Of a stretch of 64,000 nt of DNA, positions 3,589 through 58,891 are shown in pieces. The DNA lies in the IMG/VR virus record IMGVR_UViG_3300042879_006196, positions 186,001-250,000 of that record; one strand, 5' to 3'. The notes beneath the pieces were generated by a model. That model did no database searches. It saw nothing but the letters and a program-made list of their open reading frames with translations, and was not told where the DNA came from. Made by a program: the position numbers and the translations under genes. Position 1 is the first letter of the stretch. Every line of letters begins with the position of its first letter.

Positions 3589-3807
3589 ATGCGTTTTAGT
3601 AGTTTATCAGAAGCAATAAAATATCACACACAAGTTACAAGCAAAACTGATAACATTGCACCTTATGGTTCTCTTGCTGCTGAATTATCTCAAATTCCAG
3701 TGTTGAACACAAACTATATAACGCCACAATCTCCTAATGCAATTACCTATGGTGTTACAATCTGGGGCTTAGGTAAAATCACAGAAGTAAATAAACCAGA
3801 AGTATGA
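3589..3807 (+). CDS. Hypothetical protein, 72 aa
   Basis: Fills the gap between two large ORFs and its stop overlaps the next start (ATGA). Confidence 0.65.
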   Translation: MRFSSLSEAIKYHTQVTSKTDNIAPYGSLAAELSQIPVLNTNYITPQSPNAITYGVTIWGLGKITEVNKPEV

Positions 3808-37000: not shown

Positions 37001-40000
37001 AATGTTGTATTTGACACTTCTAAATCTTTTGAAATCAATGATACAGCTATTGTCACACAATCTGGAGTATCCACTTCTTATGTAAGAACTGCAGTAATTA
37101 ATGCCTTAGTGCCAACTGGAATAAACTCTGACACTTTATATACACGCTTGTCGAATGGTTTTGGCACTAGCAAATTGCTTACAGCAATATATGGATTTAA
37201 CAATAAAATCAATGATTTATTGTTTTATTCAACAGCAAATGCTTCTTCATCTTCAAGTTGTTTAACTTCCTCATCAGTATCATTTGAAGGTTACTCAAAT
37301 AACTCAAGTTTGATTTCTGAATCTATTAGTTATGTTTCAAATACTGGAAGATTATCTAAATTGTATGATGCTATGCTTTTTAATGCTCGATTACAATTCC
37401 CAGCTATTGTTTCTGGATTCTATAAAAATAATTTAAGCCAAATTGATACTAACTTTATAAATTTACAATCTGTAAAGGAGCAGTACAAGAGTGATTTTGA
37501 TTTGTATTTAAGTTTAAATCTTAGTTTATTATCATTCACCACTTATAATGTTTACTATGGAGATAACACTAATAATTTTGTTTGGGTGGAAGATAATTAT
37601 AGTTACAGCATTGTGGTTCTTTCGGATGGCTCATGCACAACAAATTTCACTTTCGATTCGACGAATGGAACTTGCACAGTAACATCTTTGCTTACACCTT
37701 TATACTTGTTGCTAAGCAAAGACTGGGATTTTGATGTAAGTATTTCAGATTTGTCCGATGATATAAATATTTGGTCAAGCTCAACTAATGCTTTAGATTT
37801 AGTAACAAATCAATATGCACTCAGTTTTAAGCCTTTAATAATTGTAACCACTGATGGAAATGATGATTCTCAAGCTACTCCTGAATCTGTTAATGCATCA
37901 CTTAAAGTGGCTTATTCTGGAACAGGTACGCAAGTTTTAGTAATTGAGCCAACACAATCTGGAAATGAAAATTACCTCAGAAAGATGATAGAGCAGACAA
38001 ACTCTAAAGTTTTTAAATATCTATCTTATCCTGAAGATGAATTAAAAAATGTTCTTTTTGAAGAAGACAGCCTAAATTTACTTTCATCTTATTGGGAAAG
38101 AAAATATGATTTTGATGAACCTAAATTCATAAGTTATATTTACACATCATTTGTTGAGCCTGGTAATTCATCAGCAAATGTAATGTTCAGATGGTCTGCA
38201 GATCGTGTAGAGTTTAGTAATTACATTAGCTTAATTAACAATTCAAGATATAATTTGAATCAAAAAGTTTTAGCAATAGAATATTTAATAGATATGGTGG
38301 AAGATTATAGTTCTAACACCAGAATTCTTCCATATGTGAAACAACTTTATCATGTAAGTGTAATCCCTGCAACACAAACTTACCTTACATATCCTCAAGA
38401 TATATCTGGGCAACTTTTTGAAACATTAGCTCTTGGTTCTTTCACAAATAGTGCTTTAGTGGACATCACACCAATTGTAGGAAGAACAGAATCTGCTGAC
38501 ACTTCTTATTACGAGCAAGTGCAGCTTAACAGAAACGGTGCATTACCAAACAGGCAAACTTCTTACAGAATTACTCCAGCATTTAGTGTTACAGGTTTAA
38601 AACTAATTCCTGTGACCAATGAAGAGAATAATTCTAGCTACTATATAGTTGATAACAATTCCACGTTGTACACTTGGACAAATAATGATAAATTCTATTT
38701 GTATTCTGACGGAAATCCTATAAGCCCCACTGCCTATTCTACAGTGCCAGAAAGTGGAATATTATTGATTACAAATATTTACACAATTGTGAATGGAGTT
38801 TACTTATATGAATCATTTACTGCACAAATTGATTACGTTGAGTCAAGAGAGACAATTATTGGCGAGCCAACAATAACATACGATTACAAAACATACTATT
38901 TAAGCAATGGCAGAATTCCCACTGATGCAAAAGTGGTTGTTTTAGTAAACCAAGAGATTTATAAAGGTATTTACACAGTTAGTGCATATGATGGAACTAT
39001 TACTTTTGCAAGTATAAGAGAAACATCAGATTATGTGACAGTATTTATTCAATTTTCAAATCAATTTAGGGCTGGCTTACAGATTGAAAGTTATTCAGCT
39101 GATAATTTAACTTTGCAAAGTTTCAATTTCACATACACAAGTGTGCCTAATCTCAATACATATTTAGACTCATTCTATTATGCAAAGCCTTTCCTTTCTG
39201 GATCACCTACATTGTCGCCATTGTCTCCGAACATAGATAGCACTTTGTCTCTTACTTACAGCTATCAAGACGAAAGTAATGCGCCAGAAAATGGATCTAC
39301 TATACAATGGTGGCGGCAAAGAACAGGCATTGAATATGTAACGTTCAATACTGCTGCAAACTTAAGTGTAACTGGAGCTTTAGTGGGCATAAATACATTT
39401 ACTGTTAAATCACTTTATAATCAATCTGAAAATCCATTTATTCTTTCTGTTACTACAAATTCGAATGGCATCACAACTAATGTAGTGAGGGTTGTTATTT
39501 CTGATAGAGGGTCAGGATTTATTGGCACTGGGACAAATCTGCAAGCTTCTGTATCAGTGCCTTTATCAACTAATCCAGTAACGTTTGCGACAATCAATAA
39601 TTTGGGCTTGGCAATAACAGCTTACACTTTGAAAGCACCTTATACACCTGGTTACGCAACCACTGATAACTTCGTGAGAATAAACCCAAATTCTCCAACA
39701 GGCTATGCATCCACAACTTTTGGATATTCATCATCTGTGGTCTTATATTCTTATCCGAACTACGATGGAAGATTGTTTGAGCAAACTAATGATGTTGCTG
39801 GTCGTGTAATTTTTGATGGTAGAGATGTGGTTTATGCAACTGTAACACCAAGCAATGGAGTTTCAGAAGGTTCAACATATCAATCAAATCCAATTACAAT
39901 AAATCCATTTTACACACCTGTTCTTTCCAGCTTGACTATTGTTGGATCAATTTCTAGCTATAATGGAGTTAGTACTAACTTGAATGTTTTTGCAAATACT

Positions 40001-40243
40001 CCTCAAACTCCACTATATAATTTCAATTATGCAATAAGCCCATTCAATCAATACGTGGTAATTAATTGGTTTAAACTTGTTGAGACTGGAGTGAAAAATA
40101 TATCTTCATCAACTACCCTTTCGAGTAATTTGATAAATGCTTCTGATCAAATATATTACACAGCATACCCTGCGGTAATTCAGTCCAACGGAACTTATGG
40201 GTTCGGTAATACAGTTAATTCAGAGATTTACACAGTGATATAG
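31034..40243 (+). CDS. Giant virion protein with Asp-box (BNR) repeats and vWA domain, 3069 aa
   Basis: TAATG overlap with the previous ORF; N-terminus paralogous to the 1681-aa ORF; Asp-boxes LYLSTNFGITYS, GLWVSNDDGDTWS; vWA elements VVFDTSKS..LYDAM..IIVTTDGNDD..LRKMIEQTNSKVF. Confidence 0.8.
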   Translation: MSKRTPIYNYLYLESGDVIYPGYDKDNQFTSENQIFGMYSYLGQGIISGWTIHWMGCLSDAYVLQQRQALIDAYRTDRFSYLALQYQSLNYPVTEADWKQCIVVKPGLGIVDVFHAATEYPTFFRFTEVNHYYVWAQKNVCTNTEYLCEIVAPEYPDEDYDLANQAIYIGEVFTGVVNSSVAVTQITYSERRRELKNAQGDIQRILNQALINHVHSGEGDNPSKINLSTNVTIIVPIIENSNTFTFTLPSGFNSNNYATPQVYLNSNLLMSSQYQISGSIIYLQNSVPITSSLQIVYQLAPGPNIYITSSLTPPLQNITLSFEKIYYLTDGTTTTASDGTQVFNVWNWNDNNYSEIKVYLSTEALDVQTYSIYQLKGVDNSGGRLKFIGPILPSILNYGETDVVVKFTVPSFEVTGKLSASRIASINASSFTRGTLSNARISRLDHLGLYRLDERATVIPTKKLLDSGDHIHFYPEIESVIQHSDYILNTTTTRYVKETSADSTTSPKTIISTPNGLFASKRSTLDFSTIVKLPWNTDNGVADEFSENYFGNFNTYQLPGTTTENLNPKAFWILCKNKNQFKNVLYLSTNFGITYSKITIPFTSSGSIVTINDFIFTVNVFQFTVGEVILTPKLDVNYIYYIAATDGLYSATILRSQNKLKPVWDNPTKNTTNASTGSINKISEAVNVGTITTTYDSGLTERNYQNYRALYAACDSGLFVYQSGTGLKFTTNSTAYNSDNSTFYFSKWLGVEDSSNQIFAVAWADSYGLYFSNSGQKITTTSSSGSSRTVTITFYEPLTLSRTSTTTVSCASTENIDITEAITSIDGYSLVNSALVLLKNQTDPSQNGVYIWSSTSELLYKQSSFNTKVYVTNGTQSQTEWIQLESDPENLNAINYALWFANILSLESNDQIVSIANDKSGGPNSNTTETRYYQSFFVATTKYIYRVLNYNTPNIYPTISQINWDYENNGLITNIQHYSVEDPENGQLVVFTENGIFKSKSSAFEYGPLDSSGNLVLPNNSYERFINNVTAPQADNASVYDAYTLEEYVGKITSVSIATSIVTVPDGTYTNQRVYANNTQGSGLTVDLTIKSNVITSLEINRGGVNYGEDLPNPYVVIGEQKIFLQNAVTQGYFTCNYDSQYFVYSKSDGINPSSLLYEVNYTNFYVEPWNNFPLVTAKINNTPTNNTFGYNAETGEIVFVDSLPKSLKDSVTVSLTNKGQYISNTGDTPHGEVFNISIADSVPSASISSTYYSSSGSNILPLKNINNTRWNSEITSLKVTGLRPATNSSTLQSYTEILQVSVDTTAGLIVYIKSKPTTLPLTVNSNVFIVRPYDNVLGIEDKIFLSKSNLTYHMDSVSHANVYTLSNALTNINPDLYDYPIVPNETLSGVDRGLKNTIALKSLSEFDPTATFVGYTFGVDPSSSDVAASPSTINLILNFSYGNNPTFATNKGIWQYFRASKSWVKLDSVGDSNVINFADKTLTNSSNISFTYAGTDQGLFYQQDGVYTLDPLFTEPNLSVSMGSWYTSAKNTTKRFEAYGKDNSMSFVLRTTKTQEQTTTLQSDYFEGHTIYDLYYNTFYRYDDKGNRTEHPAIYLATDYSVWAFTTDAAPGSPPPSSRGANHTLLVGREMFGNNILRNINRLNPSALGIPVKVYKILEVPSGGRSTWLAVATSNGVYVVINWRQCDVGDPNGLTFYPQNKFSSNETVGHSCFVIIPKSTDTSNSTYFVGTEVGVFKSVSKCGDWSRVSKFDNQDLSVSDLKYFNDSSGNGILVAATNLGLWVSNDDGDTWSTVEDYNDPQVQIETSATYGSPLSDLPIQTFTPVSDGYVSKAFAYFNPGDLTGITTLKAYISNGTATTQSSSSIELNSSSYPGMYGFAFSNVSCISTMSYSLGIVTDNATYASQVTWGLSNLNNPYTQGSASTSGGTLLNKDFFFRINLTTPATPTEVIEPVGFYNTSYSIGFASGTYLGASISSTGYLYSNVGILCNVVFDTSKSFEINDTAIVTQSGVSTSYVRTAVINALVPTGINSDTLYTRLSNGFGTSKLLTAIYGFNNKINDLLFYSTANASSSSSCLTSSSVSFEGYSNNSSLISESISYVSNTGRLSKLYDAMLFNARLQFPAIVSGFYKNNLSQIDTNFINLQSVKEQYKSDFDLYLSLNLSLLSFTTYNVYYGDNTNNFVWVEDNYSYSIVVLSDGSCTTNFTFDSTNGTCTVTSLLTPLYLLLSKDWDFDVSISDLSDDINIWSSSTNALDLVTNQYALSFKPLIIVTTDGNDDSQATPESVNASLKVAYSGTGTQVLVIEPTQSGNENYLRKMIEQTNSKVFKYLSYPEDELKNVLFEEDSLNLLSSYWERKYDFDEPKFISYIYTSFVEPGNSSANVMFRWSADRVEFSNYISLINNSRYNLNQKVLAIEYLIDMVEDYSSNTRILPYVKQLYHVSVIPATQTYLTYPQDISGQLFETLALGSFTNSALVDITPIVGRTESADTSYYEQVQLNRNGALPNRQTSYRITPAFSVTGLKLIPVTNEENNSSYYIVDNNSTLYTWTNNDKFYLYSDGNPISPTAYSTVPESGILLITNIYTIVNGVYLYESFTAQIDYVESRETIIGEPTITYDYKTYYLSNGRIPTDAKVVVLVNQEIYKGIYTVSAYDGTITFASIRETSDYVTVFIQFSNQFRAGLQIESYSADNLTLQSFNFTYTSVPNLNTYLDSFYYAKPFLSGSPTLSPLSPNIDSTLSLTYSYQDESNAPENGSTIQWWRQRTGIEYVTFNTAANLSVTGALVGINTFTVKSLYNQSENPFILSVTTNSNGITTNVVRVVISDRGSGFIGTGTNLQASVSVPLSTNPVTFATINNLGLAITAYTLKAPYTPGYATTDNFVRINPNSPTGYASTTFGYSSSVVLYSYPNYDGRLFEQTNDVAGRVIFDGRDVVYATVTPSNGVSEGSTYQSNPITINPFYTPVLSSLTIVGSISSYNGVSTNLNVFANTPQTPLYNFNYAISPFNQYVVINWFKLVETGVKNISSSTTLSSNLINASDQIYYTAYPAVIQSNGTYGFGNTVNSEIYTVI

Positions 40244-40275: not shown

Positions 40276-41202
40276 ATGTCTAATCCAATTAAATTCATTC
40301 CAGATTTAAGAGATAAAATTTTAAATCAAGTTTCTATTCTGAATGAGCAACAGAATTGGGGGCTATCTTTTATTGAAGCTTCTTATGCTTGGCAACATTC
40401 AAAAGGAGAAGATGTAAAGGTGGCAATAATAGACACAGGATGGTTTCCTCACAAAGATTTACAAGTGAATTTTTTAGATGGGTATGATGCCACTGGCAAT
40501 AATGATTTTATGGATCATGGCTCATATCATGGCACACATGTGGCTGGAATAGTTGGTGCTAATTGTGGGCAAAATATTGGCGTAATGGGTGTTGCGCCAA
40601 GCTGTAAACTTATTCCCATAAAGGCACTTGATGATGATGGCACTGGTTCATTTGATTTCATTGCAAACGCTTTACAAATCGCACACGACTTAGATGTAGA
40701 TATAATCAATATGTCTCTTGGAACAGAATCCGATTATGGTCAAAGCAAAGTACATTCATTGATAAAAGATATAACAGCAAAGGGCAAGATTGTGGTTTGT
40801 GCTAGTGGGAATGATGGAGAAGATGTAAACTTTCCAGCAAAATATGATGAATCAATTGCTGTGGCAGCTGTTGAAAATGATGGAAAATTGGCTCGTTTTT
40901 CTTCGAGAGGTCCTGAGCTTGATGTTGCGGCACCTGGTGTAAAAATTTATTCTACTTGGGGAAACAATCAATATGTGAATCTTGATGGCACATCTATGGC
41001 TTGTCCAACTATTTCTGGAATAATTGCATTGATAATTTCTTGGTATAAAAAAAATCCAGACCCAAATTTTCAAATAAATTTCACGAACATGATCAAACTT
41101 ATGTATGATTTAGGTGGACCAGAAGGTGACCATATTGTACAACAAGGATCGTATAATATTGGAGTGCCTAAATTACAAAATTTTAATCCTTGGAAAAATT
41201 AA
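40276..41202 (+). CDS. S8 subtilisin-family serine protease (intracellular-subtilisin-like), 308 aa
   Basis: Catalytic triad motifs IIDTG, HGTHVAG, GTSMACP and oxyanion CASGN; no signal peptide; short N-terminal extension containing KFIPD. Confidence 0.95.
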   Translation: MSNPIKFIPDLRDKILNQVSILNEQQNWGLSFIEASYAWQHSKGEDVKVAIIDTGWFPHKDLQVNFLDGYDATGNNDFMDHGSYHGTHVAGIVGANCGQNIGVMGVAPSCKLIPIKALDDDGTGSFDFIANALQIAHDLDVDIINMSLGTESDYGQSKVHSLIKDITAKGKIVVCASGNDGEDVNFPAKYDESIAVAAVENDGKLARFSSRGPELDVAAPGVKIYSTWGNNQYVNLDGTSMACPTISGIIALIISWYKKNPDPNFQINFTNMIKLMYDLGGPEGDHIVQQGSYNIGVPKLQNFNPWKN

Positions 41203-41204
41203 CA

Positions 41205-41825
41205 ATGTCAGAAAAAGTAACAGATAGAATACAAGAAGTGATTGCACAATCTGTGCCTGCCTCATGCACTATATTTGTAAAAACAAGAAAACAATCTTGG
41301 TCAGGAAGCGGCTTTCACATAGGAAATGGCTATGTTGTTACTGCTTCACATGTTGCACCTGAAGAATTAATGTCCAGTGGAGACGTAAAAGTAACTTTTG
41401 ATGGTTCATTATTATTGGATTGTTCAGTTTTCAAATCAGATCCTAATATAGACGCGGCTATTTTAAAAATTGAATCAGATTGGTCAAATATTCCTTCTGT
41501 AGTTTTAGCAAACTCAGACGCTGTTGAATTGGGTGAAACTGTTGCAGTTATAGGCGCGCCAGAAATGTTTCATGACACAGTAACGGTTGGAAGAGTAAGC
41601 AATACAGATCAATCACTAGGAGATGCCGCCCCATCTCCAGCTTGGAATAATATAATGTTTGTTGATGCAAAAATCATACAAGGAGTAAGCGGCGGAATGT
41701 GCGTTGGCACAGATGGTCTTGTAATTGGTTCAGTAATTGGAGTCACAGGGATGCTTGCAGAATATGGTGTAGGTGAGAATGTTATTTGTCCTTCCAATAA
41801 AATAATTAATCTTTTGAAAAGTTAA
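41205..41825 (+). CDS. Trypsin-like (S1, HtrA-type protease domain) serine protease without PDZ
   Basis: GSGFHI..VVTASHV, DAAILK, GVSGG. ATG at 41205 preferred over the track's TTG at 41190 because it follows the S8 stop. Confidence 0.9.
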   Translation: MSEKVTDRIQEVIAQSVPASCTIFVKTRKQSWSGSGFHIGNGYVVTASHVAPEELMSSGDVKVTFDGSLLLDCSVFKSDPNIDAAILKIESDWSNIPSVVLANSDAVELGETVAVIGAPEMFHDTVTVGRVSNTDQSLGDAAPSPAWNNIMFVDAKIIQGVSGGMCVGTDGLVIGSVIGVTGMLAEYGVGENVICPSNKIINLLKS

Positions 41826-41841: not shown

Positions 41842-42798
41842 ATGGATTATTATTCAATACTTGAATTAGATAGAACGGCGTCTCCCGAAGATATCAAAAA
41901 ATCTTACAGAAAACTAGCAAAACAATATCATCCAGATGTAAACCCCAACGATCCAATATCTGAGGAAAAATTTAAACAAGTAAGTGAAGCATATGAAGTT
42001 CTTTCAGATGAACAAAAAAAACACAACTATGATACTTATGGTAATGTAAATGGTGGGGGTTTTACTGATTTTGGTTTCAATATCAATTTTGATCCTGGTT
42101 CAATATTTGAAGAATTTTTTGGACCCAGGAGGCAACCTGAAAGAAATACTGATCTGCAAATTGAATTGCAATTACAATTAAAGGATTTTGTTAAAGGCTG
42201 CGTTCATACTGTCAAAATCAATAAAAGAAAAAAATGCCTTGATTGTGACGGATTAGGGGGATTTGATTTCAATGCATGCCCTGACTGCAATGGCTCTGGC
42301 ATGATTCAACATTCCAGTTTTAACCATATGTTTTTTGTTCAAACATCTCCTTGTGGCAGATGTAGTGCCAAGGGCAAAATTCCACAAAGACAATGTGATA
42401 AATGTAACGTTACTGGATTCATTAATTACGTTTCAGAAATTAATATCAATATTCCTGAAAATTGTCCAATATTTGCTACTTTACAACTTCAAGGTCAAGG
42501 TAATCAAGAAAAAAATAATTTACCTCCTGGAAATTTGTTTGTAAGACTTGTTCCAGTCTCAAACGGCTTTGAAGTAGATCATGAGGGCAACGTTAAGTTG
42601 ATCAAAGAAATTAATTTGCAAAATTGGGTAAATAACGAAGAAATTTCAATTGATAGATTTGGAATAGAAGCATTCAAATTTTCATTGTATAATTTAAGTA
42701 GCTCTGATAGTCAAATCAAATTTGATGGGATGGGCGCAAAGAATGCAAATAACAGCCGCCAAGGTGACTTTATAGTAGCATTCAGAATAACTAAATAA
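41842..42798 (+). CDS. dnaJ: DnaJ (class A) co-chaperone, 318 aa
   Basis: J-domain with HPD (KQYHPDVN), short G/F region, four Cys repeats ([32 protein letters not shown]) and C-terminal domain ([13 protein letters not shown]). Confidence 0.95.
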
Positions 42799-45061: not shown

Positions 45062-46687
45062 ATGGGAATATTTATTGGCTGTGATTTAGGCACAACAAAT
45101 TCTGTTGTTTGCTTTAAAAATTCAAAAAATGAATTTGAATTTGTTAAAGATGAATCAGGAAACAAACTTATTCCATCTGTAGTTTGCTATGCTGATGAGC
45201 TATATGTTGGTAGAGAAGCGGTTGAAAATGAAGAAAATTTTCCTGAAAAAACTATAAGATCTTCTAAAAGATTTATTGGTAATAATAATTCTGATTATGA
45301 CGCAACAGAAGTTGCCAAGCATATCTTAGAGTATTTAAAAAGCATAACAGAATCTCACTCAAAAGAAGCAATTGAAGGCTTAGTAATCACTGTGCCAGCT
45401 TATTTTAATCAAAATCAAAGATTAGAAACTAAAAAAGCTGCTGAACTAGCTGGTTTTAAAGTCTTAAGAATTATTAATGAGCCTACCGCTGCCGCCTTAG
45501 CATACGGGGAAGACACTAACTTAAATGAACTTGTTCTTGTGTACGATTTGGGAGGTGGCACTTTCGATGTAACACTGTTACAGTTATCTGATGATAAAGT
45601 TTATCAGGTGTTAGCGACTTCAGGAAATACAAAACTTGGAGGAGATGATTTTGATAATTTGTTAGTAAATTACATTATTGGCGAGATACCACATCATTTC
45701 AATGAATTTAAAGATTTTCAAGTTAGGCTTAAAAAATTTGCCGAAGAAATAAAAATACAATTAAATTATAAATCTAAGGTGAGCAAAACTTTAAAATATT
45801 GTGGATTATTACATGGTAAACTTTATCATCACAAAGTAGAAATATTAAAAGAAGATTATGAAAAAATGATTCATCCTCTATTACTCAAAACAAAATCTCA
45901 TGTTTTGACAGCTTTAAACGATGCAGACAAAAAAATATCTAATTTGTCTAAAATTATTTTAGTTGGTGGCTCAACAAAATCAAAAATTGTTAGAGAATTT
46001 GTTGAAAAAGAATTTAACACAAAAGTCTTTTATGAAATTGACCCAGATTTAACTGTGAGCGCTGGAGCTGCAAATTTAGCTCACTCTATCGCCGTTAAAA
46101 ACGCTGACAGTGCCATTCTTGTAGATGTCACTCCACTATCACTTGGAATTGAAACTAAAGGGGGATTGTTGAATAAAATTATTCCTAGAAATACGAATGT
46201 ACCAGTAAGTGCTGCGCAAGACTTTATAACAGCAGAAGATAACCAAGAATCTGTGAATATCAAAATTTATCAAGGTGAAAGACCTCTTGCCAAAGATAAT
46301 GAGTTTCTTGGTGAGTTTGTGTTAAGTGGATTTGAAAAACGACCAAAAGGGCAAACAAAAATTGTTGTTAAGTTTGATATTGATGCATCGGGTTTAATTA
46401 CTGTCACTGCTTTTGATAAAATTTCAGGCTTACAGTCTGAAGTCACGTTAAAATCCTTGACTTCAGAAAAAACAAATGAGTTGCTTGATAATATTGAAGC
46501 AAGCTTACATGATGACAAAAAAATACTAGAAAAAATTGAATTAGAAGAATTAAGACAAGAAGCAAAAACTCTTATGCTAACACAAAGTATATTAAATAAA
46601 GATGAAGATTTAGAATCCACTTATGATGCTGTAAAAGATAATCTTGTTGCCCTAAAAGTTTTCATACAATCGTTAAACAATGCATAA
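45062..46687 (+). CDS. dnaK: Hsp70/DnaK chaperone (short form), 541 aa
   Basis: GCDLGTTNS, IINEPTAAALAYG, YDLGGGTFDV, ILVGGST, linker VDVTPLSLGIE and substrate-binding DNQ..V.I.IYQGER. Confidence 0.95.
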   Translation: MGIFIGCDLGTTNSVVCFKNSKNEFEFVKDESGNKLIPSVVCYADELYVGREAVENEENFPEKTIRSSKRFIGNNNSDYDATEVAKHILEYLKSITESHSKEAIEGLVITVPAYFNQNQRLETKKAAELAGFKVLRIINEPTAAALAYGEDTNLNELVLVYDLGGGTFDVTLLQLSDDKVYQVLATSGNTKLGGDDFDNLLVNYIIGEIPHHFNEFKDFQVRLKKFAEEIKIQLNYKSKVSKTLKYCGLLHGKLYHHKVEILKEDYEKMIHPLLLKTKSHVLTALNDADKKISNLSKIILVGGSTKSKIVREFVEKEFNTKVFYEIDPDLTVSAGAANLAHSIAVKNADSAILVDVTPLSLGIETKGGLLNKIIPRNTNVPVSAAQDFITAEDNQESVNIKIYQGERPLAKDNEFLGEFVLSGFEKRPKGQTKIVVKFDIDASGLITVTAFDKISGLQSEVTLKSLTSEKTNELLDNIEASLHDDKKILEKIELEELRQEAKTLMLTQSILNKDEDLESTYDAVKDNLVALKVFIQSLNNA

Positions 46688-52333: not shown

Positions 52334-53611
52334 TTATTGTATCACCGCTTGATCTTGCACTGCAAGCATGTTAGTATTATATGAAAGACTCAAAGATAAC
52401 CCCTCTACTACATTTTCAGTCCACGTAGGAGGTTTTATTGCCATACTGAAAATATCTGAATTTCTCAAATAATTATTGTTAACTAATCTGGTATAAATGG
52501 TTACGCCAAGAACAGTATCTGAAGCCGCTCCTACTTGTCTAGCCCACAAAGATGGTGTATTTGTTACTGAGCTAATGTTCAACGTTAAAAAATTAAAAAA
52601 TACAGACGAATATAAATAATTTGATGACGTTACTGTTGCAGGGTTAACATACCAAATGACGTTTGATGATAAAGTTGTTAAATCATATCCCACTTCAAAG
52701 AATTGATGTATAAAAACATAATCTGGATATATTGGCTGTATATAAACAAAGCCATTAACAATTTTAGTGATCAAATATAGTCCTGATGTTTTCCCCCCTA
52801 AAGATCCTGCGCCATCTGTTAAGACGTTTACTGCTACTACTTGATTTAGCTCTAAACTAACACTCGAAAATAAACTTGCATTTAATTTATTTTCAGAAAG
52901 TTCACTACTTAGTGTGATGCCATAATCTGCAGAGGTTAGTTTTAAATTTGCAGTTTGAGACACCCAAAAATATCCACTTGTGTTATACAATCCGTAAAAT
53001 GAATCCCCGTATTGGTCACTGACTTTAACTCTTGTAAAAATATATGATTGGTTTTGAGTTAACAATGAATTTACGCTTGCTGTGTCGCTTGAATCATCAT
53101 ATACTGTTAAATTTATACCAGTTATAGTTGTAACTCTGTATATTTTATTTTCTGAGTTAGTGGTTTGATTTTTTAGCAAAATTAAATCATTTAAATTTAA
53201 TGTGTTTGACAATACAGAAGTATAACTGGCAATTTGATAATAGTTACTGCCTATTGCAGTAAGTGTTACGTTCGTACTTTTATCTGTAGCTGAAACCAAA
53301 GGAAAAAAACATACTGTTGGGCTATTATAATTTAAAAACCTATAATCAAAGCCTCTGTCAAACCCATTCAAAGAATAATATGTGGAATTTCTGATAGAAG
53401 AAACATTTTTGTCATCAAATGACATCGAAAGTTCTAATGCATTTTGATTAGTTATAGTGAACAGAAATTGTTTATTCTGAAGATTCATGTATGTGTTATT
53501 ATCGCCATTATCAGAAATAGATAATAGCGATAATTTCGGCTCAATGACCGCATTATTTGCCACTTGATATAATCTCACATCTTGTGGCAAAGGTATATCG
53601 TTGTAGTTCAT
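52334..53611 (-). CDS. Putative virion structural protein, 425 aa
   Basis: Contains LNDLILLKNQTTNSENKIYRV and a second degenerate copy of this phage-tail motif. Confidence 0.6.
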   Translation of the reverse strand: MNYNDIPLPQDVRLYQVANNAVIEPKLSLLSISDNGDNNTYMNLQNKQFLFTITNQNALELSMSFDDKNVSSIRNSTYYSLNGFDRGFDYRFLNYNSPTVCFFPLVSATDKSTNVTLTAIGSNYYQIASYTSVLSNTLNLNDLILLKNQTTNSENKIYRVTTITGINLTVYDDSSDTASVNSLLTQNQSYIFTRVKVSDQYGDSFYGLYNTSGYFWVSQTANLKLTSADYGITLSSELSENKLNASLFSSVSLELNQVVAVNVLTDGAGSLGGKTSGLYLITKIVNGFVYIQPIYPDYVFIHQFFEVGYDLTTLSSNVIWYVNPATVTSSNYLYSSVFFNFLTLNISSVTNTPSLWARQVGAASDTVLGVTIYTRLVNNNYLRNSDIFSMAIKPPTWTENVVEGLSLSLSYNTNMLAVQDQAVIQ

Positions 53612-54966
53612 TTTCTTAATTTAAAAATGCTTGAAGCTGCAGCTGACAAAATAGATCTTTCCACTTTGTTCATTGTAATTGCTGCGGCAACTTCATGAGT
53701 TTTACTACCATTGATTGCATGAGCTAATCCACAAGAATTTTTATCAAGATACGGATTTTCTATTTGTGACATATCTCCTAATAATATAACTTTAGAATTT
53801 TTCCCACATCTTTCAACAACCATTCTTGCTTCTTTAGGGCTTACATTTTCTGCTTCATCTAAGATGATAAAACTATTTGGAATAGATCTTCCTTGAATAA
53901 AAGCCATTGCCTCCACTTCTATGATTCCTTCTTCAACCATATCTTCAAAGCTATTTCCTCCAAATTTTCCATCATACCCTTTAAAAGCTGTTAACTGTAC
54001 AATGTTGTCTTTGATTGGACCCAGCCAAGCACTTACTTTTTCTAATTTAGAACCTGGCAAAAATCCAATTTCTTTGCCACCTACGGCAACCATTGGTTTC
54101 ATAACAATTATTCTATCATATTGTCCAAGATTTACTTTTTCTAGCCCCACTGCAATAGCCATTAAAGTTTTTCCGCTACCTGCTGGTCCACTTAAGCACA
54201 CAAGAGGTATATTATCATTTGCCAACGCCTCAAGAGCAAATCTTTGCTCCATGTTCTTTGCAGTAATTCCCATGTAAGATTCTTTTTTCTTTTTGTCATC
54301 CATGAACTTAATTTCTCTTTCGTAAAACCAAGCTAACACAGACTGATTTCCAAATCTAAAACAAATAAATTCATTAGGATTTAAATTTTCTAATTGATCT
54401 TGGCAGACTAAATTTGAAATTTTGCATTCTTCTCTTTTTGACAAATATTCCCAATCTGACAATTCATTTATAGAAACAATTCTATAACCCTCAAAAAAGT
54501 TTTTCTCTGATAACAAATCACTTTTGTAATTTTCAGCAACGCAACCCCAAGATATCGCCCTTACTCTTAATCCAGTGTCTTTGGAAACCACTACTACTTT
54601 TCTTTTTGGATTTGCGGCTTTTAATGAAATTGCCGAGTCAATAATTGCATTATCAGAGTTCACTCTAGTAATAGATGGTTTTTCATTTCTCATTAAAGGT
54701 GCTTCATTGTTATAAATAAAAAGTTTGCCACCTTTTTCATTTATCACCACTCCTTTAGTCATTTGTTGAATATCATATTGATCTAAATTTCTAAAAACTT
54801 CTCTAGCCGCCCATCCTGCGGTTTCTTTTCTTGTTTTAATTTCATCTAAATCATCAATGCAAGCCAGAGGAATGTAAATATCATTTTCTTCAAATTTGTA
54901 AATACAATCTGGATCGTGCAATAATACGCATGTGTCAATTACGAAGATGTGTTTGGGTTTTGCCAT
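53608..54966 (-). CDS. phoH: PIN-PhoH (PhoH2/YlaK-like) protein, 452 aa
   Basis: N-terminal PIN (VIDTCVLLHD, NSDNAII, VSKDTGLR); PhoH ATPase GPAGSGKT, IGFLPG, QGRSI, ILDEAEN, LLGDMSQI; SD-like GAAGG upstream. Confidence 0.9.
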   Translation of the reverse strand: MAKPKHIFVIDTCVLLHDPDCIYKFEENDIYIPLACIDDLDEIKTRKETAGWAAREVFRNLDQYDIQQMTKGVVINEKGGKLFIYNNEAPLMRNEKPSITRVNSDNAIIDSAISLKAANPKRKVVVVSKDTGLRVRAISWGCVAENYKSDLLSEKNFFEGYRIVSINELSDWEYLSKREECKISNLVCQDQLENLNPNEFICFRFGNQSVLAWFYEREIKFMDDKKKKESYMGITAKNMEQRFALEALANDNIPLVCLSGPAGSGKTLMAIAVGLEKVNLGQYDRIIVMKPMVAVGGKEIGFLPGSKLEKVSAWLGPIKDNIVQLTAFKGYDGKFGGNSFEDMVEEGIIEVEAMAFIQGRSIPNSFIILDEAENVSPKEARMVVERCGKNSKVILLGDMSQIENPYLDKNSCGLAHAINGSKTHEVAAAITMNKVERSILSAAASSIFKLRK

Positions 54967-54997
54967 ATTTTTTACCTTCTGTTATAATTTGAGAAAT

Positions 54998-55006
54998 GAG
55001 TGCTAA
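54998..55006 (-). promoter_or_regulatory. Single CIRCE-like half-site TTAGCACTC upstream of phoH
   Basis: 9/9 match to one CIRCE arm; the partner arm is absent at the N9 spacing. Confidence 0.2.
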
Positions 55007-55013
55007 CCCTCCT

Positions 55014-55859
55014 TTAAAGTTTATCAAGGAAATCAGCTGCATTTTCATCGAATTTTGTTGAAAATAACTTTAAATTTTGCAAGTATTCCAATACTTTTCT
55101 GTCTTTATCGATAGCTTCATTAACTTTTTTTGTTTTTAAAACATTATTATTTTTTGAGACAAAAGTATCATTCAATATAGACTGTATATCACTTTTGATG
55201 TTTTCTTTGTTCTCAAAGTACTTAGAAATGTCAGACGCTCTTGAAGATTCGATTAATATTTTATCATTAAATGTAAGCATAATTGAATTATCATAAGCTA
55301 CATTGGTGGTTGCCAAAGTCTTTGAAGGAACAAATAAACACACTAAAACAGAAAGTGAATCATCAGAGTACAGGTTGTGTGAAAGCTCTGCGAGTTCTTC
55401 TGACAAATTTATAACGTTCAAACATAATTCTAAGTTTGTGTCAAGTATTTTGAAGATCCATTCATAAACATCTTCTGAAGTTGTTGGTTTGTATAAGGGC
55501 TTTAAGTTCAAATCCGTTTTCCAGTCAGAAATTAAATCAAAAAGTTGGTTTCCTAGTTTAGAAGCTAGAGAATTTTTATCAAACCAATTAAAATTATTAT
55601 CATTAATACCTAAAGAGACATTGGTTTCTTTTGAGTTATCTTCAATCAGTTTTTGTTTGCTTTTCATTAAAAACTTAAAGTCTTCATCTTTTCCGCCATA
55701 GTCTGGATGATATTTACGAGCTAATTTTCTGAAGTTTGCTTCCACCAACTTACACAATTCTTGTTTATTTACATTGTCATTTTTAATTGGAATGTCATTT
55801 TTTTCTATCTCCAAAAAATCTAAATATAGTTGATTATCAATGTAAAATTTTTCAATCAT
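55014..55859 (-). CDS. Class C J-domain protein with novel C-terminal domain, 281 aa
   Basis: NFRKLARKYHPDYGGKDEDFKFL matches J-domain helices II-III with HPD. Confidence 0.8.
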   Translation of the reverse strand: MIEKFYIDNQLYLDFLEIEKNDIPIKNDNVNKQELCKLVEANFRKLARKYHPDYGGKDEDFKFLMKSKQKLIEDNSKETNVSLGINDNNFNWFDKNSLASKLGNQLFDLISDWKTDLNLKPLYKPTTSEDVYEWIFKILDTNLELCLNVINLSEELAELSHNLYSDDSLSVLVCLFVPSKTLATTNVAYDNSIMLTFNDKILIESSRASDISKYFENKENIKSDIQSILNDTFVSKNNNVLKTKKVNEAIDKDRKVLEYLQNLKLFSTKFDENAADFLDKL

Positions 55860-56430
55860 CTATAAATTGTACAGTTAAGCTTGAAAAATCTATAGTTAAT
55901 TTAGTTTCATTCAAATCGAAGTAATTGAATTTATTTTTAATTAAGGTTTTTGACATTTTTTCAGCAAGATGAGGGTTTTTAAAATTCTTGAAAGATAATG
56001 ATCTCAATTTTTTGTTGTCTAATTTATCTTCATTTTTTGTTAAAAGTAAATATTTAAAAAGATTGTTTTCAAAATCTCTAAAATCATTTTTAAATGAAAT
56101 CATTTCATTCAAAGAGAATTGATCATACAAATTGAATATAAATTCTTCAATTTTAATTTTTTTCTTTAAACCCAAGCATTGAAGCTGTATTTTTGAAAAA
56201 AAATCAATAGGTTCGCCATAAATTTGATGAAGAATTTCATTTTCAATCAGAAAAACACGAACTGGTTTATTTTTGATAAATTCAACCACCAATAAATCGC
56301 CCGATTTTACTTCATTTATAATCAAAGATAAAGGAGGTAAATTATTTGTAAATATAGTTTCTATCACTGTTGAAAAAGGATAGCTAATTTTCTTATAAGT
56401 TTTATTAATCAAACATTTGAATTCATGCAC
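55852..56430 (-). CDS. Hypothetical protein, 192 aa
   Basis: ORF track; coupled overlaps. Confidence 0.7.
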   Translation of the reverse strand: MHEFKCLINKTYKKISYPFSTVIETIFTNNLPPLSLIINEVKSGDLLVVEFIKNKPVRVFLIENEILHQIYGEPIDFFSKIQLQCLGLKKKIKIEEFIFNLYDQFSLNEMISFKNDFRDFENNLFKYLLLTKNEDKLDNKKLRSLSFKNFKNPHLAEKMSKTLIKNKFNYFDLNETKLTIDFSSLTVQFIDD

Positions 56431-56959
56431 TGATAATATTATTCACTATGTTATCGTCATATTCATTCAAGTACGAACTAGATTTACTCCATTTATACTT
56501 CCAAACTTGATTTAATTTATGACAAATTACTTTTGTTGTAATACATGACATATCATCTAAATGTGCAGCATTTGATTTCAAGAAATTTTTTCTTTCAATG
56601 CTCCTCAGATTTAAGTTGAAAAGTTTTTTGAACTTGTTTGGAAGATAATCAAAAAAGTCATCATTTTTATCAAAACACAATCTGCACAAATCAAACACAA
56701 TCTCATATTCTATGTCTTCTAAAAAAGAATCTAAAAAATTTTCTTCAATTATTTCAAAGTATTTTTTATCCATTTCAACAAAATGAAATTCATCCTTTGT
56801 TAAAAAATTTTTCACTTTAGACAATTTCAATCTAGTGTTTTTTTTAATAATAAATCTGGGTATACCAAAAAGATTTTTTTGTTTTGCTACACATGAAGCA
56901 ATGAAATTTTCTGCTTCATGTTCATTCAATTCCTCTAAAATAACATTTAATTTATTCAA
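56423..56959 (-). CDS. Hypothetical protein, 178 aa
   Basis: ORF track; coupled overlaps. Confidence 0.7.
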   Translation of the reverse strand: MNKLNVILEELNEHEAENFIASCVAKQKNLFGIPRFIIKKNTRLKLSKVKNFLTKDEFHFVEMDKKYFEIIEENFLDSFLEDIEYEIVFDLCRLCFDKNDDFFDYLPNKFKKLFNLNLRSIERKNFLKSNAAHLDDMSCITTKVICHKLNQVWKYKWSKSSSYLNEYDDNIVNNIISA

Positions 56960-57189
56960 TTTATTTTTAATTCATCCACTGCTTGTTGAACGAATGGTGT
57001 TACCAAGCCATAATCGTCGTGAATTCGCACATGATTTAGCCTTCCGTGTTTTTCTTTTAAAATTTCTATCACTCTGTTGATAAAAAAAGTTAACTGTCTT
57101 GCCGAAGGAAACTCTTCTTTTATTGAAAGGTATTTCCTTTGGATAAGTTTTGATGCTATATATCTTATCAACTTTTCTTCAAAATTCAT
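56956..57189 (-). CDS. Hypothetical protein (~77 aa; weak GntR-like FPSARQL segment)
   Basis: ATG at 57189 overlaps the upstream TGA (ATGA), so it is preferred to 57207; the GntR recognition helix is not evident. Confidence 0.6.
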   Translation of the reverse strand: MNFEEKLIRYIASKLIQRKYLSIKEEFPSARQLTFFINRVIEILKEKHGRLNHVRIHDDYGLVTPFVQQAVDELKIN

Positions 57190-57389
57190 TTTACCATTCT
57201 TACCCAAGCTACATTTTGAGATGGGACATTTAATAAGGTGATTTTAAAATTCGCATCTTCAAAGATTGTGTGGTGATCTTTTGTGATCATTAAAAAACCT
57301 TTGATTGATGGCAGCATTTTGTTTGGATTGTAAATTTCAATAATCCATTCACCGTATCCTCTATTTAAAGGTATCATTTCGTTTCCCAC
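57186..57389 (-). CDS. Hypothetical small beta-rich protein, 67 aa
   Basis: First gene of the minus-strand run after the divergent gap 57390-57451. Confidence 0.6.
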   Translation of the reverse strand: MGNEMIPLNRGYGEWIIEIYNPNKMLPSIKGFLMITKDHHTIFEDANFKITLLNVPSQNVAWVRMVK

Positions 57390-57451: not shown

Positions 57452-58891
57452 ATGAGAAAAAAAGACTCTAAAACTGAAAATTGTACTATTTGTGCAGCTC
57501 CTGTAGATCCATCCAACGCATTTGTGTTTTATTTTAACAATCAAGAACACTTTTTCTGTGAATCTCATGAAAGACCATTCAAAATGGGCATTGATATTGG
57601 TCAAATAGAAATGAACTCAAAGTTTATATCTTTTATCTCTGATTTACCAGACCCTACCCCTAAAAATGAATTAAAATCTGCATTAAGGCAATTCATTCCT
57701 ATGACAAAAATGCAAGATCCAGAATTCAAGGAAAAAGAAAATTTTATATTATCTACAAAAATTTCTAGCCCCAAACAACTGTTCGATGAAATAGGTAAAA
57801 CAGTAATTGGTCAAGATGAGGCTAGAAAAACTATTTCAGTTTCTGTAATCAACCATTTACAATTGCTAAACCAAGATGTGGAGCAAGTTACACAATCTGA
57901 CAAGCATCATGTTTTAATGCTTGGCAAGTCAGGTTCAGGTAAAACTTTAATTGCAAATACTGTTGCAAATCTTTTCAATTTACCATTTGCCGTAGGAGAT
58001 GCTACAAATTACTCCCCTACTGGTTTTCAAGGATCTGATGCAGAGTCTATCATACATGATCTTTTGTTTAAAGCAGATATGAATTTTGATTTAGCCGAGA
58101 GAGGGATTGCATTTATTGATGAAATTGACAAAATTTGTAGTTCAAATAAATCTTCTGGAAGGTATGAATCTTTTATTGGATCAACACAATCCACTCTATT
58201 GAAACTAGTAGAAGGCAAAACTATTAAAGTACCAAGCACAGTCTTGGGTGATGGACCTGGAGCGCCATATGACTGCAGCTCGGAAAGAGTGTTGTTCTTC
58301 TTAGGTGGCGCCTTTAATGGCTTATCAGAAATTCTTGCCAAAAAGATGGGAATGAAAGAAAGGTCTGTTGGATTTATCAAAACACATGATGAAAAAAGTA
58401 AAGATATTGATGAAGCAATGAAGTCATATGAAATTTTTTCACAAGCTTCGCGTGAGGATATGGTAGAGTCTTTAATTGAATTTGGAATGCTTTCCGAACT
58501 AGTAGGAAGAATTCCATCGATAGTTGCTCTTAAGCCCTTGAGCAAAGAAGATTTAACAAAAGTTTTAGTTGAGTCCACTGTATCTCCGTTAGAAAAACAA
58601 AAGTATATTTTTGAAAAATCTGGTTATAAATTGGAATTCACTGAAGAATTCATCAAAGCAACTGTAGAAAAATCTTACAAATCAGCTGTTGGCACCAGGG
58701 CTCTTGATTCATATGTCAAAAAAGCTGTTAGCGCCGCTAGTTTTGATTTATTGTCTTTGATTAATGTGTCTGGGTCAAAAGGCACAGTACTTATCACAGA
58801 TGAGTGTTTAACAAACCCTGCCGCTTATCAAACTAGTAAAATTCTTGTTGCCAGCAGTCCTGTGTCTTTTCAAAATTCATTAACCATCTAA
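57452..58891 (+). CDS. clpX: ClpX-family AAA+ unfoldase, 479 aa
   Basis: VIGQDEARKTISVSVINH, Walker A GKSGSGKT, DAT..S.TGFQGSDAE, Walker B IAFIDEIDKI, QSTLLKLVEG, GGAFNGL, FGMLSELVGRIP, GTRAL; N-terminal Zn finger. Confidence 0.9.
   Translation: MRKKDSKTENCTICAAPVDPSNAFVFYFNNQEHFFCESHERPFKMGIDIGQIEMNSKFISFISDLPDPTPKNELKSALRQFIPMTKMQDPEFKEKENFILSTKISSPKQLFDEIGKTVIGQDEARKTISVSVINHLQLLNQDVEQVTQSDKHHVLMLGKSGSGKTLIANTVANLFNLPFAVGDATNYSPTGFQGSDAESIIHDLLFKADMNFDLAERGIAFIDEIDKICSSNKSSGRYESFIGSTQSTLLKLVEGKTIKVPSTVLGDGPGAPYDCSSERVLFFLGGAFNGLSEILAKKMGMKERSVGFIKTHDEKSKDIDEAMKSYEIFSQASREDMVESLIEFGMLSELVGRIPSIVALKPLSKEDLTKVLVESTVSPLEKQKYIFEKSGYKLEFTEEFIKATVEKSYKSAVGTRALDSYVKKAVSAASFDLLSLINVSGSKGTVLITDECLTNPAAYQTSKILVASSPVSFQNSLTI

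What the first reader, a model, noticed from the sequence alone, without database searches (positions are those of the whole stretch)
57452..58891. ClpX with every substrate-recognition loop rewired but the ClpP-docking motif retained
Seen: pore-1 reads GFQG (58022-58033) instead of GYVG, the pore-2 region reads SSGRYESFIGS instead of RDVSGEG, the RKH-loop position reads LGDGPGA, and an IGF-like SVGF remains. Walker A/B, arginine finger and sensor-2 look intact. Established: these loops set ClpX specificity (ssrA etc.), and the IGF loop docks on ClpP. Inference: a viral unfoldase that could capture host ClpP and redirect proteolysis, for example to defence proteins or virion scaffolds.
Basis: partly seen in the sequence, partly recalled or inferred. 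Interest (0 to 1): 0.62.

Follow-up and report, generated by a model that had tools for sequence, protein, structure and literature searches.

The report
Jumbo-phage ClpX with rewired specificity loops
A lake-water giant phage encodes a strongly diverged ClpX protein-unfolding motor whose substrate-reading loops are all replaced, and it carries its own ClpP protease and an unusual basic-tag tmRNA, so it probably runs a private protein-degradation machine rather than hijacking the host's ClpP.

Summary
ORF 57452-58891 (+), 479 aa, is a ClpX homologue (33% identical to E. coli ClpX; best folds are ClpX chains). Its ATPase motifs and a V-G-F ClpP-docking tripeptide are intact. Pore-1 reads GFQG, pore-2 is rebuilt, and RKH is replaced by an acidic G-D-G-P-G. 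These variants are not private or decayed. They are the conserved signature of a deep, monophyletic family (120 relatives examined, down to 40% identity) found on jumbo-phage contigs and essentially absent from about 185,000 species genomes.

The interpretation needs correcting. The 347-kb phage encodes its own canonical ClpP, with an intact catalytic triad. ClpP was present on all five long contigs where a family member's presence could be checked, so capturing host ClpP is unnecessary.

The phage also encodes a tmRNA 3 kb from ClpP. Its 23-residue tag is strongly basic (+5) and ends in VA. Related tags occur in three related lineages. Thirty bacterial tags and ten other phage tags are neutral or acidic.

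My reading is a phage ClpXP with private, charge-inverted specificity. The phage tag is a candidate degron, but this is speculative, because at least one family genome lacks a tmRNA. Binding and substrates are untested.

The parts
57452..58891 (+). CDS of the ClpX-like AAA+ unfoldase (479 aa, P0001)
   Evidence: (NCBIfam ClpX 249.7 bits, below the 359 cut-off)
57482..57568 (+). N-terminal Zn-finger-like module: C11-x2-C14 ... C36-x2-H39. The three Cys are invariant in the family, and position 39 alternates His/Cys.
   Evidence: The fold is confident for residues 11-40, but there is no significant structural match and no PF06689 hit.
57923..57946 (+). Walker A motif GKSGSGKT (residues 158-165)
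58022..58033 (+). Pore-1 loop GFQG (residues 191-194) in place of GYVG
58118..58123 (+). Walker B residues D223 and E224
58157..58180 (+). Pore-2 region GRYESFIG (residues 236-243) in place of TRDVSGEG. The family consensus is R-x-E-S-F.
58247..58261 (+). RKH-loop equivalent GDGPG (residues 266-270), acidic instead of basic
   Evidence: loop net charge -1 in 110 of 120 relatives; E. coli +1
58367..58375 (+). VGF tripeptide (residues 306-308), equivalent to the ClpP-docking IGF
58508..58510 (+). R353, the arginine-finger equivalent (E. coli R307)
58697..58699 (+). R416, the sensor-2 equivalent (E. coli R370)
58802..58819 (+). Conserved motif in the C-terminal extension (C452 and P456 nearly invariant); function unknown
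55014..55859 (-). J-domain-like protein (HPD motif) in conserved synteny with the ClpX-like gene
   Evidence: PF00226, E = 5e-4, below the cut-off. The syntenic gene hits DnaJ in relatives.
53608..54966 (-). PIN-PhoH ATPase, a conserved syntenic neighbour

Best explanation
The gene encodes the ATPase (unfoldase) subunit of a phage-encoded ClpXP-type protease with its own substrate specificity. Shown: it is a ClpX-fold AAA+ protein with all ATP-hydrolysis motifs intact and a retained [IVLM]-G-[FL] docking tripeptide. It belongs to a deep, monophyletic ClpX family found on phage contigs. In that family the six positions that read the ssrA degron in E. coli ClpX (Y153, V154, T199, V202, R228, H230) are replaced by a different, conserved set, and the entry loop is acidic instead of basic. 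The genome encodes a canonical ClpP and no other Clp/Hsp100-type ATPase. Inferred: hexamers of this protein dock through VGF on the phage's own ClpP and feed it substrates chosen by the new loops. Because the entry-ring charge is inverted, I expect it to disfavour canonical ssrA-type degrons and to favour basic degrons or basic substrate surfaces. A candidate substrate class is proteins tagged by the phage's own tmRNA, whose tag is strongly basic. The gene sits within a larger phage proteostasis set (two Hsp70s, DnaJ, a second J-protein, GroEL-like, ClpS).
For: Identity and fold. Motif conservation in 120 relatives. Monophyly, with a long branch and SH-aLRT of 100. Other phage and cellular ClpX keep GYVG, RDVSG, RKH, IGF and CxxC..CxxC. 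Phage contexts with conserved PIN-PhoH / J-protein synteny. Only one family member (a 2.5-kb contig in a MAG, almost identical to a viral contig) turned up among about 185,000 species genomes. Own ClpP with an intact triad and a conserved pocket core (L23, L48, F49, Y62, L114). Only one AAA_2-type ATPase in the genome. Role of the six residues and of RKH charge: PMC7652416 and bioRxiv 10.64898/2026.07.31.739446. tmRNA and tags; controls.
Against: No physical evidence of binding exists, and the complex prediction gave no verdict. The ClpX-like gene and ClpP lie about 81 kb apart and are not an operon. The ClpX-like gene is syntenic with a J-protein and PIN-PhoH, not with ClpP. Twenty of 25 long ClpP-bearing phage records have no ClpX at all, so phage ClpP can work without a phage ClpX. 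A few family members have V-S-L or V-T-L in place of IGF. The phage ClpS implies some dealing with host ClpA-ClpP. For the tag idea: G004 (family ClpX-like plus ClpP, 89% complete) has no tmRNA, and L181 lacks one at the syntenic site. The loop signature is therefore older and wider than the tmRNA.
Confidence: 0.6

Rival explanations
1. One reading: the phage unfoldase docks mainly on host ClpP and redirects host proteolysis, for example toward defence proteins or scaffolds.
For: The docking tripeptide is retained. ClpP is so conserved (the phage ClpP is about 70% identical to bacterial ClpPs) that cross-docking is plausible. The phage also carries ClpS without a ClpA, which shows that it engages the host Clp system in some way. 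Iyer et al. suggest this for phage ClpS (PMC7824862).
Against: The phage has its own intact ClpP, and ClpP accompanies the family wherever long contigs allow a check. Nothing indicates the proposed targets.
Confidence: 0.12
2. It is a ClpP-independent remodelling or assembly chaperone. It would unfold or disassemble phage or host complexes (as ClpX does with MuA), possibly in virion assembly, working with the neighbouring J-protein and Hsp70 system.
For: The conserved synteny is with a J-domain protein and PIN-PhoH, beside structural-looking genes, not with ClpP. Iyer et al. propose translocase or assembly roles for phage ClpX. In phage G both ClpX and ClpP are found in virions (PMC12484599). 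Some family members have lost the Gly or Phe of the tripeptide.
Against: The tripeptide is kept as [IVLM]-G-[FL] in at least 115 of 120 relatives. That conservation is hard to explain without a ClpP partner. ClpP co-occurs wherever this could be tested.
Confidence: 0.18
3. It is a decaying or non-functional ClpX copy, or a mis-assigned HslU or other AAA+ protein, whose odd loops reflect relaxed selection.
For: It scores below the ClpX equivalog cut-offs.
Against: All catalytic motifs are invariant, and the variant loops are themselves conserved over 120 relatives down to 40% identity. The ORF is intact. The best sequence and fold matches are ClpX. HslU scores far lower (120 bits) and only over the N-terminal part.
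Confidence: 0.02

Closest known systems
Bacterial ClpX (E. coli ClpX; NCBIfam TIGR00382 / NF003745)
   Same: Same AAA+ module and fold (33% identity over 390 residues; Foldseek TM-score by target up to 0.84). Walker A/B, Arg finger, sensor-2 and an IGF-type ClpP-docking tripeptide are shared. A Zn-Cys module sits at the N-terminus.
   Different: It scores below both equivalog cut-offs. GYVG becomes GFQG, pore-2 is rebuilt, and RKH becomes an acidic G-D-G. The N-domain is C3H with a longer spacer and has no zf-C4_ClpX hit. It has an extra conserved linker and C-terminal extension. The gene is not next to clpP. The family branches outside all sampled cellular and phage ClpX.
Canonical phage-encoded ClpX or ClpXP (for example Agrobacterium phage Atu_ph07, Bacillus phage G, IMG/VR loci L011, L013, L026, L143-L145)
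   Same: These are ClpX genes carried by jumbo phages, often together with ClpP and sometimes a tmRNA.
   Different: They keep the canonical C4 Zn domain, GYVG, RDVSG, an RKH-type basic loop and IGF. The two that also have tmRNAs carry ordinary tags ending in AA (G020 and G025).
Human mitochondrial CLPX
   Same: It is a natural ClpX that does not read ssrA tags, because pore-2 and RKH positions differ (Leu at the T199 and H230 equivalents). Transplanting the E. coli loops restores ssrA recognition (PMC7652416).
   Different: The human protein keeps an RKL loop, so it remains basic. The phage family inverts the charge and also changes pore-1.
HslU
   Same: It is the next-closest AAA+ unfoldase by sequence.
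   Different: It reaches only 120 bits against a 362 cut-off, and the match is split. The present protein has the IGF-type loop of ClpX. HslV was not searched for.
Orthogonal tag/protease pairs such as Mesoplasma florum Lon with its own ssrA tag (recalled from memory, not tested here)
   Same: The concept is the same: a tmRNA tag read by a cognate protease and not by E. coli ClpXP. This is an analogy for how the system might work.
   Different: That system uses a different protease family and is cellular, not viral. No data here show that the phage tag is read by the phage ClpX-like protein.

Membership tests
ClpX (NCBIfam equivalogs NF003745 / TIGR00382) | Whole-protein HMM score at or above the curated cut-off | tested here: not met
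   249.7 bits against 359, and 227.4 against 370.75; 227.1 bits in the genome search
ClpX | AAA+ module with Walker A/B, arginine finger and sensor-2, and a ClpX-type fold | tested here: met
   Motifs are invariant in 120 relatives. The top PDB sequence and fold matches are all ClpX.
ClpX | N-terminal C4 zinc-binding domain (Pfam PF06689, zf-C4_ClpX) | tested here: inconclusive
   No PF06689 hit in any of the 32 members scanned. A conserved C-x2-C...C-x2-[H/C] motif aligns with the E. coli Cys columns. The domain model has no significant structural match (best Foldseek E = 0.07, best VIA Z = 4.0).
ClpX | GYVG pore-1 loop | tested here: not met
   It reads GFQG. The family has F/Y followed by Q/H.
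ClpX | RKH loop (ClpX-specific basic entry loop) | tested here: not met
   It reads G-D-G. Loop net charge is -1 in 110 of 120 relatives.
ClpX | IGF-type tripeptide loop for docking on ClpP | tested here: met
   VGF at residues 306-308. The family pattern is [IVLM]-G(115/120)-F(109)/L(11).
ClpX | Physical and functional partnership with ClpP | not testable with these tools
   Only genomic co-occurrence is shown. The complex prediction gave no verdict.
ClpP (Pfam PF00574), for the proposed partner at G000:324775-325350 | HMM score over the cut-off and a Ser-His-Asp triad | tested here: met
   251.7 bits against 20.2. S97, H122 and D171 are conserved, and the protein is 51% identical to E. coli ClpP.
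tmRNA (Rfam RF00023), for the proposed tag source at G000:321534-321917 | Covariance-model score over the gathering threshold and an in-frame tag ORF | tested here: met
   108.2 bits against 47, full length. ARAGORN reports a tag. SmpB is absent from the phage.
HslU | HMM score over the cut-off | tested here: not met
   120.1 bits against 362.45, split into 3 stretches

The most novel reading that the evidence does not exclude
The phage runs a private tag-and-destroy circuit. Its own tmRNA, using host SmpB and ribosomes, appends a long, strongly basic tag (+5 or +6, ending in VA, FA or TA). Host ClpXP, with its basic RKH ring, would handle this tag poorly. The phage's charge-inverted ClpX-like protein would read it specifically and deliver tagged proteins to the phage ClpP. 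The result would be an orthogonal degron/protease pair that evolved inside a virus.
Probability: 0.2. Interest if true: 0.85.

Novelty: new variant of a known kind. Interest (0 to 1): 0.6.

Why it matters
ClpX is the textbook model for how AAA+ proteases choose substrates. Six loop residues and the positive RKH ring are known to set that choice. Here nature has replaced all of them at once, inverted the ring's charge, and kept the result stable across a large group of jumbo phages that also carry ClpP. That gives a ready-made natural experiment on ClpX specificity, and a concrete test of the recent proposal that entry-ring electrostatics govern unfolding. For phage biology, it suggests that some giant phages bring a self-contained proteolysis machine, within a wider chaperone kit, rather than depending on host ClpXP. 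If the basic tmRNA tag proves to be its degron, this would be the first viral orthogonal tagging-and-degradation system. It could also be a useful orthogonal degron/protease pair for synthetic biology.

Tried and rejected
1. Complex prediction of the ClpX-like AAA+ module (residues 100-465) with two copies of the phage ClpP gave no answer (score 0.06, mark 0.32). It is not evidence either way.

2. The single-protein scan of viral contigs found nothing. The alignment-based scan found only three family members, all on fragments without ClpP, which is uninformative.

3. A back-translated KKTRRFNP pattern in viral contigs gave three chance matches with no tmRNA, ClpP or ClpX-like gene.

4. The metagenome scan with a tmRNA-block pattern added no new distinct tags beyond the four lineages.

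5. ARAGORN alone missed the tmRNAs in L176 and L179, which Rfam found.

6. Candidate host: the only 'cellular' family hit is a 2.5-kb contig binned to a Kapaibacterium MAG. It is almost identical to a viral contig, and the MAG yielded no tmRNA. The host remains unknown.

7. The idea that an acidic ring fits a basic phage proteome is rejected. Of 302 predicted phage proteins, 68% are net negative, with a median charge of -4.

8. Expression: the two 'RNA?' runs are probably DNA and the one true RNA run holds nothing, so there is no evidence either way.

9. N-domain homology to the ClpX ZBD could not be established.

10. The large all-against-all protein search was not run. The word search and family scans settled identity, and the absence claim was tested with the genome-contig scan instead.

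11. Record-name confirmation that P0003 lies on the 239,548-bp contig failed, because the place was not shown.

Full report
**What is there.** The ORF 57452..58891 (+) encodes a 479-aa protein. NCBIfam places it nearest the ClpX equivalogs, but clearly below their cut-offs: 249.7 bits against 359, and 227.4 against 370.75. HslU is far behind at 120 bits. Pfam sees AAA_2, AAA and the ClpB_D2-small lid. The best matches among solved structures are all ClpX, with E. coli at 1e-53. BLASTP gives 33% identity over 390 residues. An AlphaFold2 model (mean pLDDT 77.6) finds ClpX chains from ClpXP complexes as its top Foldseek matches, with TM-score by target up to 0.84.

| Element | E. coli ClpX | This protein | Window coordinates |
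|---|---|---|---|
| Pore-1 | GYVG | GFQG (191-194) | 58022-58033 |
| Pore-2 | TRDVSGEG | GRYESFIG (236-243) | 58157-58180 |
| Entry loop | RKH | G266-D267-G268 | within 58247-58261 |
| ClpP docking | IGF | VGF (306-308) | 58367-58375 |

Walker A, Walker B (D223/E224), R353 (Arg finger) and R416 (sensor-2) are intact.

**Not a one-off, not decay.** A word-based search returned 1,923 relatives. The 120 best fall into two tiers, 50-73% and 40-45% identical. Aligned with E. coli ClpX, they all share the variant loops:
- Pore-1 is F (111) or Y (9), followed by Q (103) or H (16).
- The R228 equivalent is G in 112.
- The K229 equivalent is D or E in 107.
- The loop's net charge is -1 in 110 of 120, against +1 in E. 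coli.
- The pore-2 consensus is R-x-E-S-F.
- The docking tripeptide is [IVLM]-G(115)-F(109)/L(11).
- The four catalytic residues are invariant in all 120.

HMMER/BLAST and MAFFT differ by one or two residues in the pore-2 register. Under either register the equivalents of T199 and V202 are replaced.

**Distinct from other ClpX.** Other phage ClpX genes (L011, L013, L026, L143-L145) and cellular ones (L042-L044, L178) keep CxxC..CxxC, GYVG, RDVSG, GGRKHP and IGF. In a maximum-likelihood tree of 64 sequences, the 38 family rows form one group separated from all other ClpX by a long branch with SH-aLRT support of 100. This is the quick tree, because the careful search did not finish.

**Viral, not cellular.** The window is positions 186001-250000 of a 347,392-bp IMG/VR virus record estimated 99% complete. 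It is about 32% G+C and has 23 tRNAs. The DNA is found in 18 lake-water metagenome runs. Family members from both tiers lie on contigs of up to 370 kb. Their neighbours are phage-type, and the local gene order is strikingly conserved: PIN-PhoH, a J-domain protein, three or four small genes, then the divergently transcribed ClpX-like gene. The window has the same order, with PIN-PhoH at 53608-54966 and the J-protein at 55014-55859. A scan of one genome for each of about 185,000 prokaryote species found a single family member. It is a 2.5-kb contig binned to a Kapaibacterium MAG, and it sits at almost zero distance from viral contig L009 in the tree, so it is most likely a mis-binned phage fragment. 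No GenBank phage holds a family member; the best match is 36% identical.

**The phage has its own ClpP.** At G000:324775-325350 lies a 191-aa ClpP scoring 251.7 bits on PF00574. It is 51% identical to E. coli ClpP, has S97, H122 and D171, and begins at the mature N-terminus. It is about 70% identical to bacterial ClpPs, far more conserved than the ClpX-like protein. The core of the docking pocket (L23, L48, F49, Y62, L114) is invariant. The variable pocket positions also vary among its bacterial relatives. The ClpX-like gene is the only AAA_2-type ATPase in the genome.

**Co-occurrence of ClpX-like and ClpP.**
- Direct, same record: G000; G004 (358 kb); G005 (166 kb); and KRAE22 scaffold_22 (207,455 bp), with ClpX-like P0023 at about 89-92 kb and ClpP P0234 at about 158 kb.
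A 158,595-bp contig is suggested the same way.
- Conversely, 20 of 25 long ClpP-bearing phage records have no ClpX at all, and three have a canonical one.

So the family occurs within ClpP-bearing phages, but ClpP does not require it.

**What the replaced residues do in the model system.** In the E. coli recognition complex, Y153 and V154 (pore-1), T199 and V202 (pore-2), and R228 and H230 (RKH) contact the ssrA degron and control binding and specificity. R228A shifts specificity away from ssrA. Human ClpX has Leu at the T199 and H230 equivalents and does not degrade ssrA substrates (PMC7652416). A 2026 preprint reports that the positive RKH ring favours negatively charged substrates and frustrates unfolding of positively charged ones (10.64898/2026.07.31.739446). 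By inference, the phage protein should not read canonical ssrA-type degrons, and its acidic ring should shift preference toward basic degrons or surfaces. The simple alternative, that the ring matches a basic phage proteome, fails: 68% of 302 predicted phage proteins are net negative.

**An unexpected companion: a tmRNA with a basic tag.** ARAGORN on the whole genome found a tmRNA at G000:321534-321917, 3 kb upstream of ClpP. Rfam confirms it at 108.2 bits against a gathering score of 47. SmpB is absent. Syntenic tmRNAs upstream of ClpP occur in three related lineages:
- L039/L194, 119 bits.
- L176, 51.1 bits, on the same scaffold as ClpX-like P0023.
- L179, 97.3 bits, linked to the lineage by synteny only.

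Read in register, all four tags are 23 residues long and share a K-K-(T/N)-R-R core. The two scored have a net charge of +5 and +6; the other two were read but not scored. They end in M-V-A, M-F-A or M-T-A. The tag of this phage is GKNAKKNRRNGFGSAQAGFAMVA.

Controls:
- Ten other tags from ClpP-bearing jumbo phages have net charge from -5 to 0.
- Thirty Bacteroidota tags are 8-10 residues long, with net charge -2 to 0, and 29 of 30 end in AA.
- The two phages with a canonical-loop ClpX and a tmRNA (G020 and G025) have ordinary tags ending in AA.

This parallel between charge-inverted tags and a charge-inverted entry ring is suggestive. It is not proof. G004 (family ClpX-like plus ClpP, 89% complete) has no tmRNA, and L181 lacks one at the syntenic site. 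The loop signature is therefore older and wider than the tag, and the tag can be at most one substrate class.

**What is already known.** Phage-encoded ClpP, ClpX and ClpS were catalogued by Iyer et al., who suggested translocase or assembly roles for ClpX and host-directed proteolysis for ClpP and ClpS (PMC7824862). Huge phages are known to carry tmRNAs (PMC7162821). Phage G has adjacent ClpP and ClpX genes, a tmRNA, and both Clp proteins in its virions (PMC12484599). I found no description of a ClpX family with these loops, nor of a link between a phage tag and a phage ClpX. That is the result of a limited library search, not proof of absence.

**Verdict.** Its central inference, capture of host ClpP, is unnecessary, because the phage brings its own ClpP. 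The most likely mechanism is a phage ClpXP with private, charge-inverted specificity (confidence about 0.6). The ClpP-independent chaperone (0.18) and host-ClpP capture (0.12) are the live rivals. The tmRNA-tag connection is the most novel reading that the evidence does not exclude (about 0.2). Binding, substrates, host and expression remain untested. The complex prediction gave no verdict, and the read data were uninformative.

Noticed in passing
outside the window: G000:C1:321534-321917 (locus L060 5535-5918): The phage encodes a tmRNA (Rfam 108.2 bits) with a 23-residue, strongly basic tag ending in AMVA, 3 kb upstream of its ClpP. Related tags occur in three related phage lineages. The phage has no SmpB.
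   Followed up: yes
window 41842-42798 (+), 45062-46687 (+), 55014-55859 (-); outside: G000:333783-335567 (-), 266293-267798 (+), 272550-272723 (-): The phage carries a large proteostasis kit: a full type-I DnaJ, an Hsp70-like protein of 541 aa, a second J-domain protein, a full DnaK (780 bits), a GroEL-like chaperonin (216 bits) and a ClpS adaptor. There is no GrpE and no ClpA, so ClpS would need host ClpA.
   Followed up: partly
window 40276-41202 (+) and 41190-41825 (+): An S8 subtilase (175 bits) and a trypsin-like serine peptidase sit next to each other just downstream of the giant ORFs. They may be virion-maturation proteases, which would argue that ClpP is not the prohead protease.
   Followed up: no
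window 14559-26975 (+), 31034-40243 (+), 3804-8849 (+), 10685-14530 (+), 27015-31034 (+), 241-3549 (+): A run of giant ORFs (4138, 3069, 1681, 1281, 1339 and 1102 aa) on one strand. Only RCC1-like repeats (in the 4138-aa protein) and an NHL repeat (in the 1681-aa protein) are recognisable. The 3069-aa protein has no Pfam hit.
   Followed up: partly
window 53608-57389 (-) and relatives L004, L035, L036, L037: The block PIN-PhoH / J-domain protein / 3-4 small ORFs, transcribed divergently from the ClpX-like gene, is conserved even between family members only about 42% identical. This suggests a functional module of unknown role.
   Followed up: partly
loci L012, L016, L018, L019, L025 (IMG/VR viral contigs): A second, unrelated phage ClpX subgroup keeps GYVG and RDVSG. 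It replaces the RKH loop with a short acidic stretch and has I-G-I instead of IGF. Loss of the basic entry ring may therefore have happened more than once in phages.
   Followed up: no
L176 2255-2610 and L179 2080-2463: ARAGORN misses these two tmRNAs, which the Rfam covariance model detects (51.1 and 97.3 bits). Surveys of phage tmRNAs that rely on ARAGORN alone will undercount this lineage.
   Followed up: yes
L041 (JALRHN010000240.1, 2,476 bp, binned to a Candidatus Kapaibacterium MAG): Its ClpX-like protein is almost identical to that of viral contig L009. The contig is probably a phage fragment mis-binned into the MAG, or at best a weak host hint.
   Followed up: partly
L176 4054-5223 (-): In one relative, an IS605 OrfB/TnpB-type gene (Cas12f-like TNB domain) is inserted between the tmRNA and ClpP.
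   Followed up: no
G000 as a whole: IMG/VR labels this 347-kb, 99%-complete jumbo-phage record a 'provirus'. The identical ClpP is listed on a contig of 356,595 bp, so about 9 kb may have been trimmed as host. I did not examine the ends.
   Followed up: no
25 long ClpP-bearing IMG/VR records (G004-G028): ClpP without any ClpX is the common state in jumbo phages (20 of 25). At least 13 of the 25 carry a tmRNA, including permuted two-piece forms. ClpP plus tmRNA is a recurrent phage combination.
   Followed up: partly
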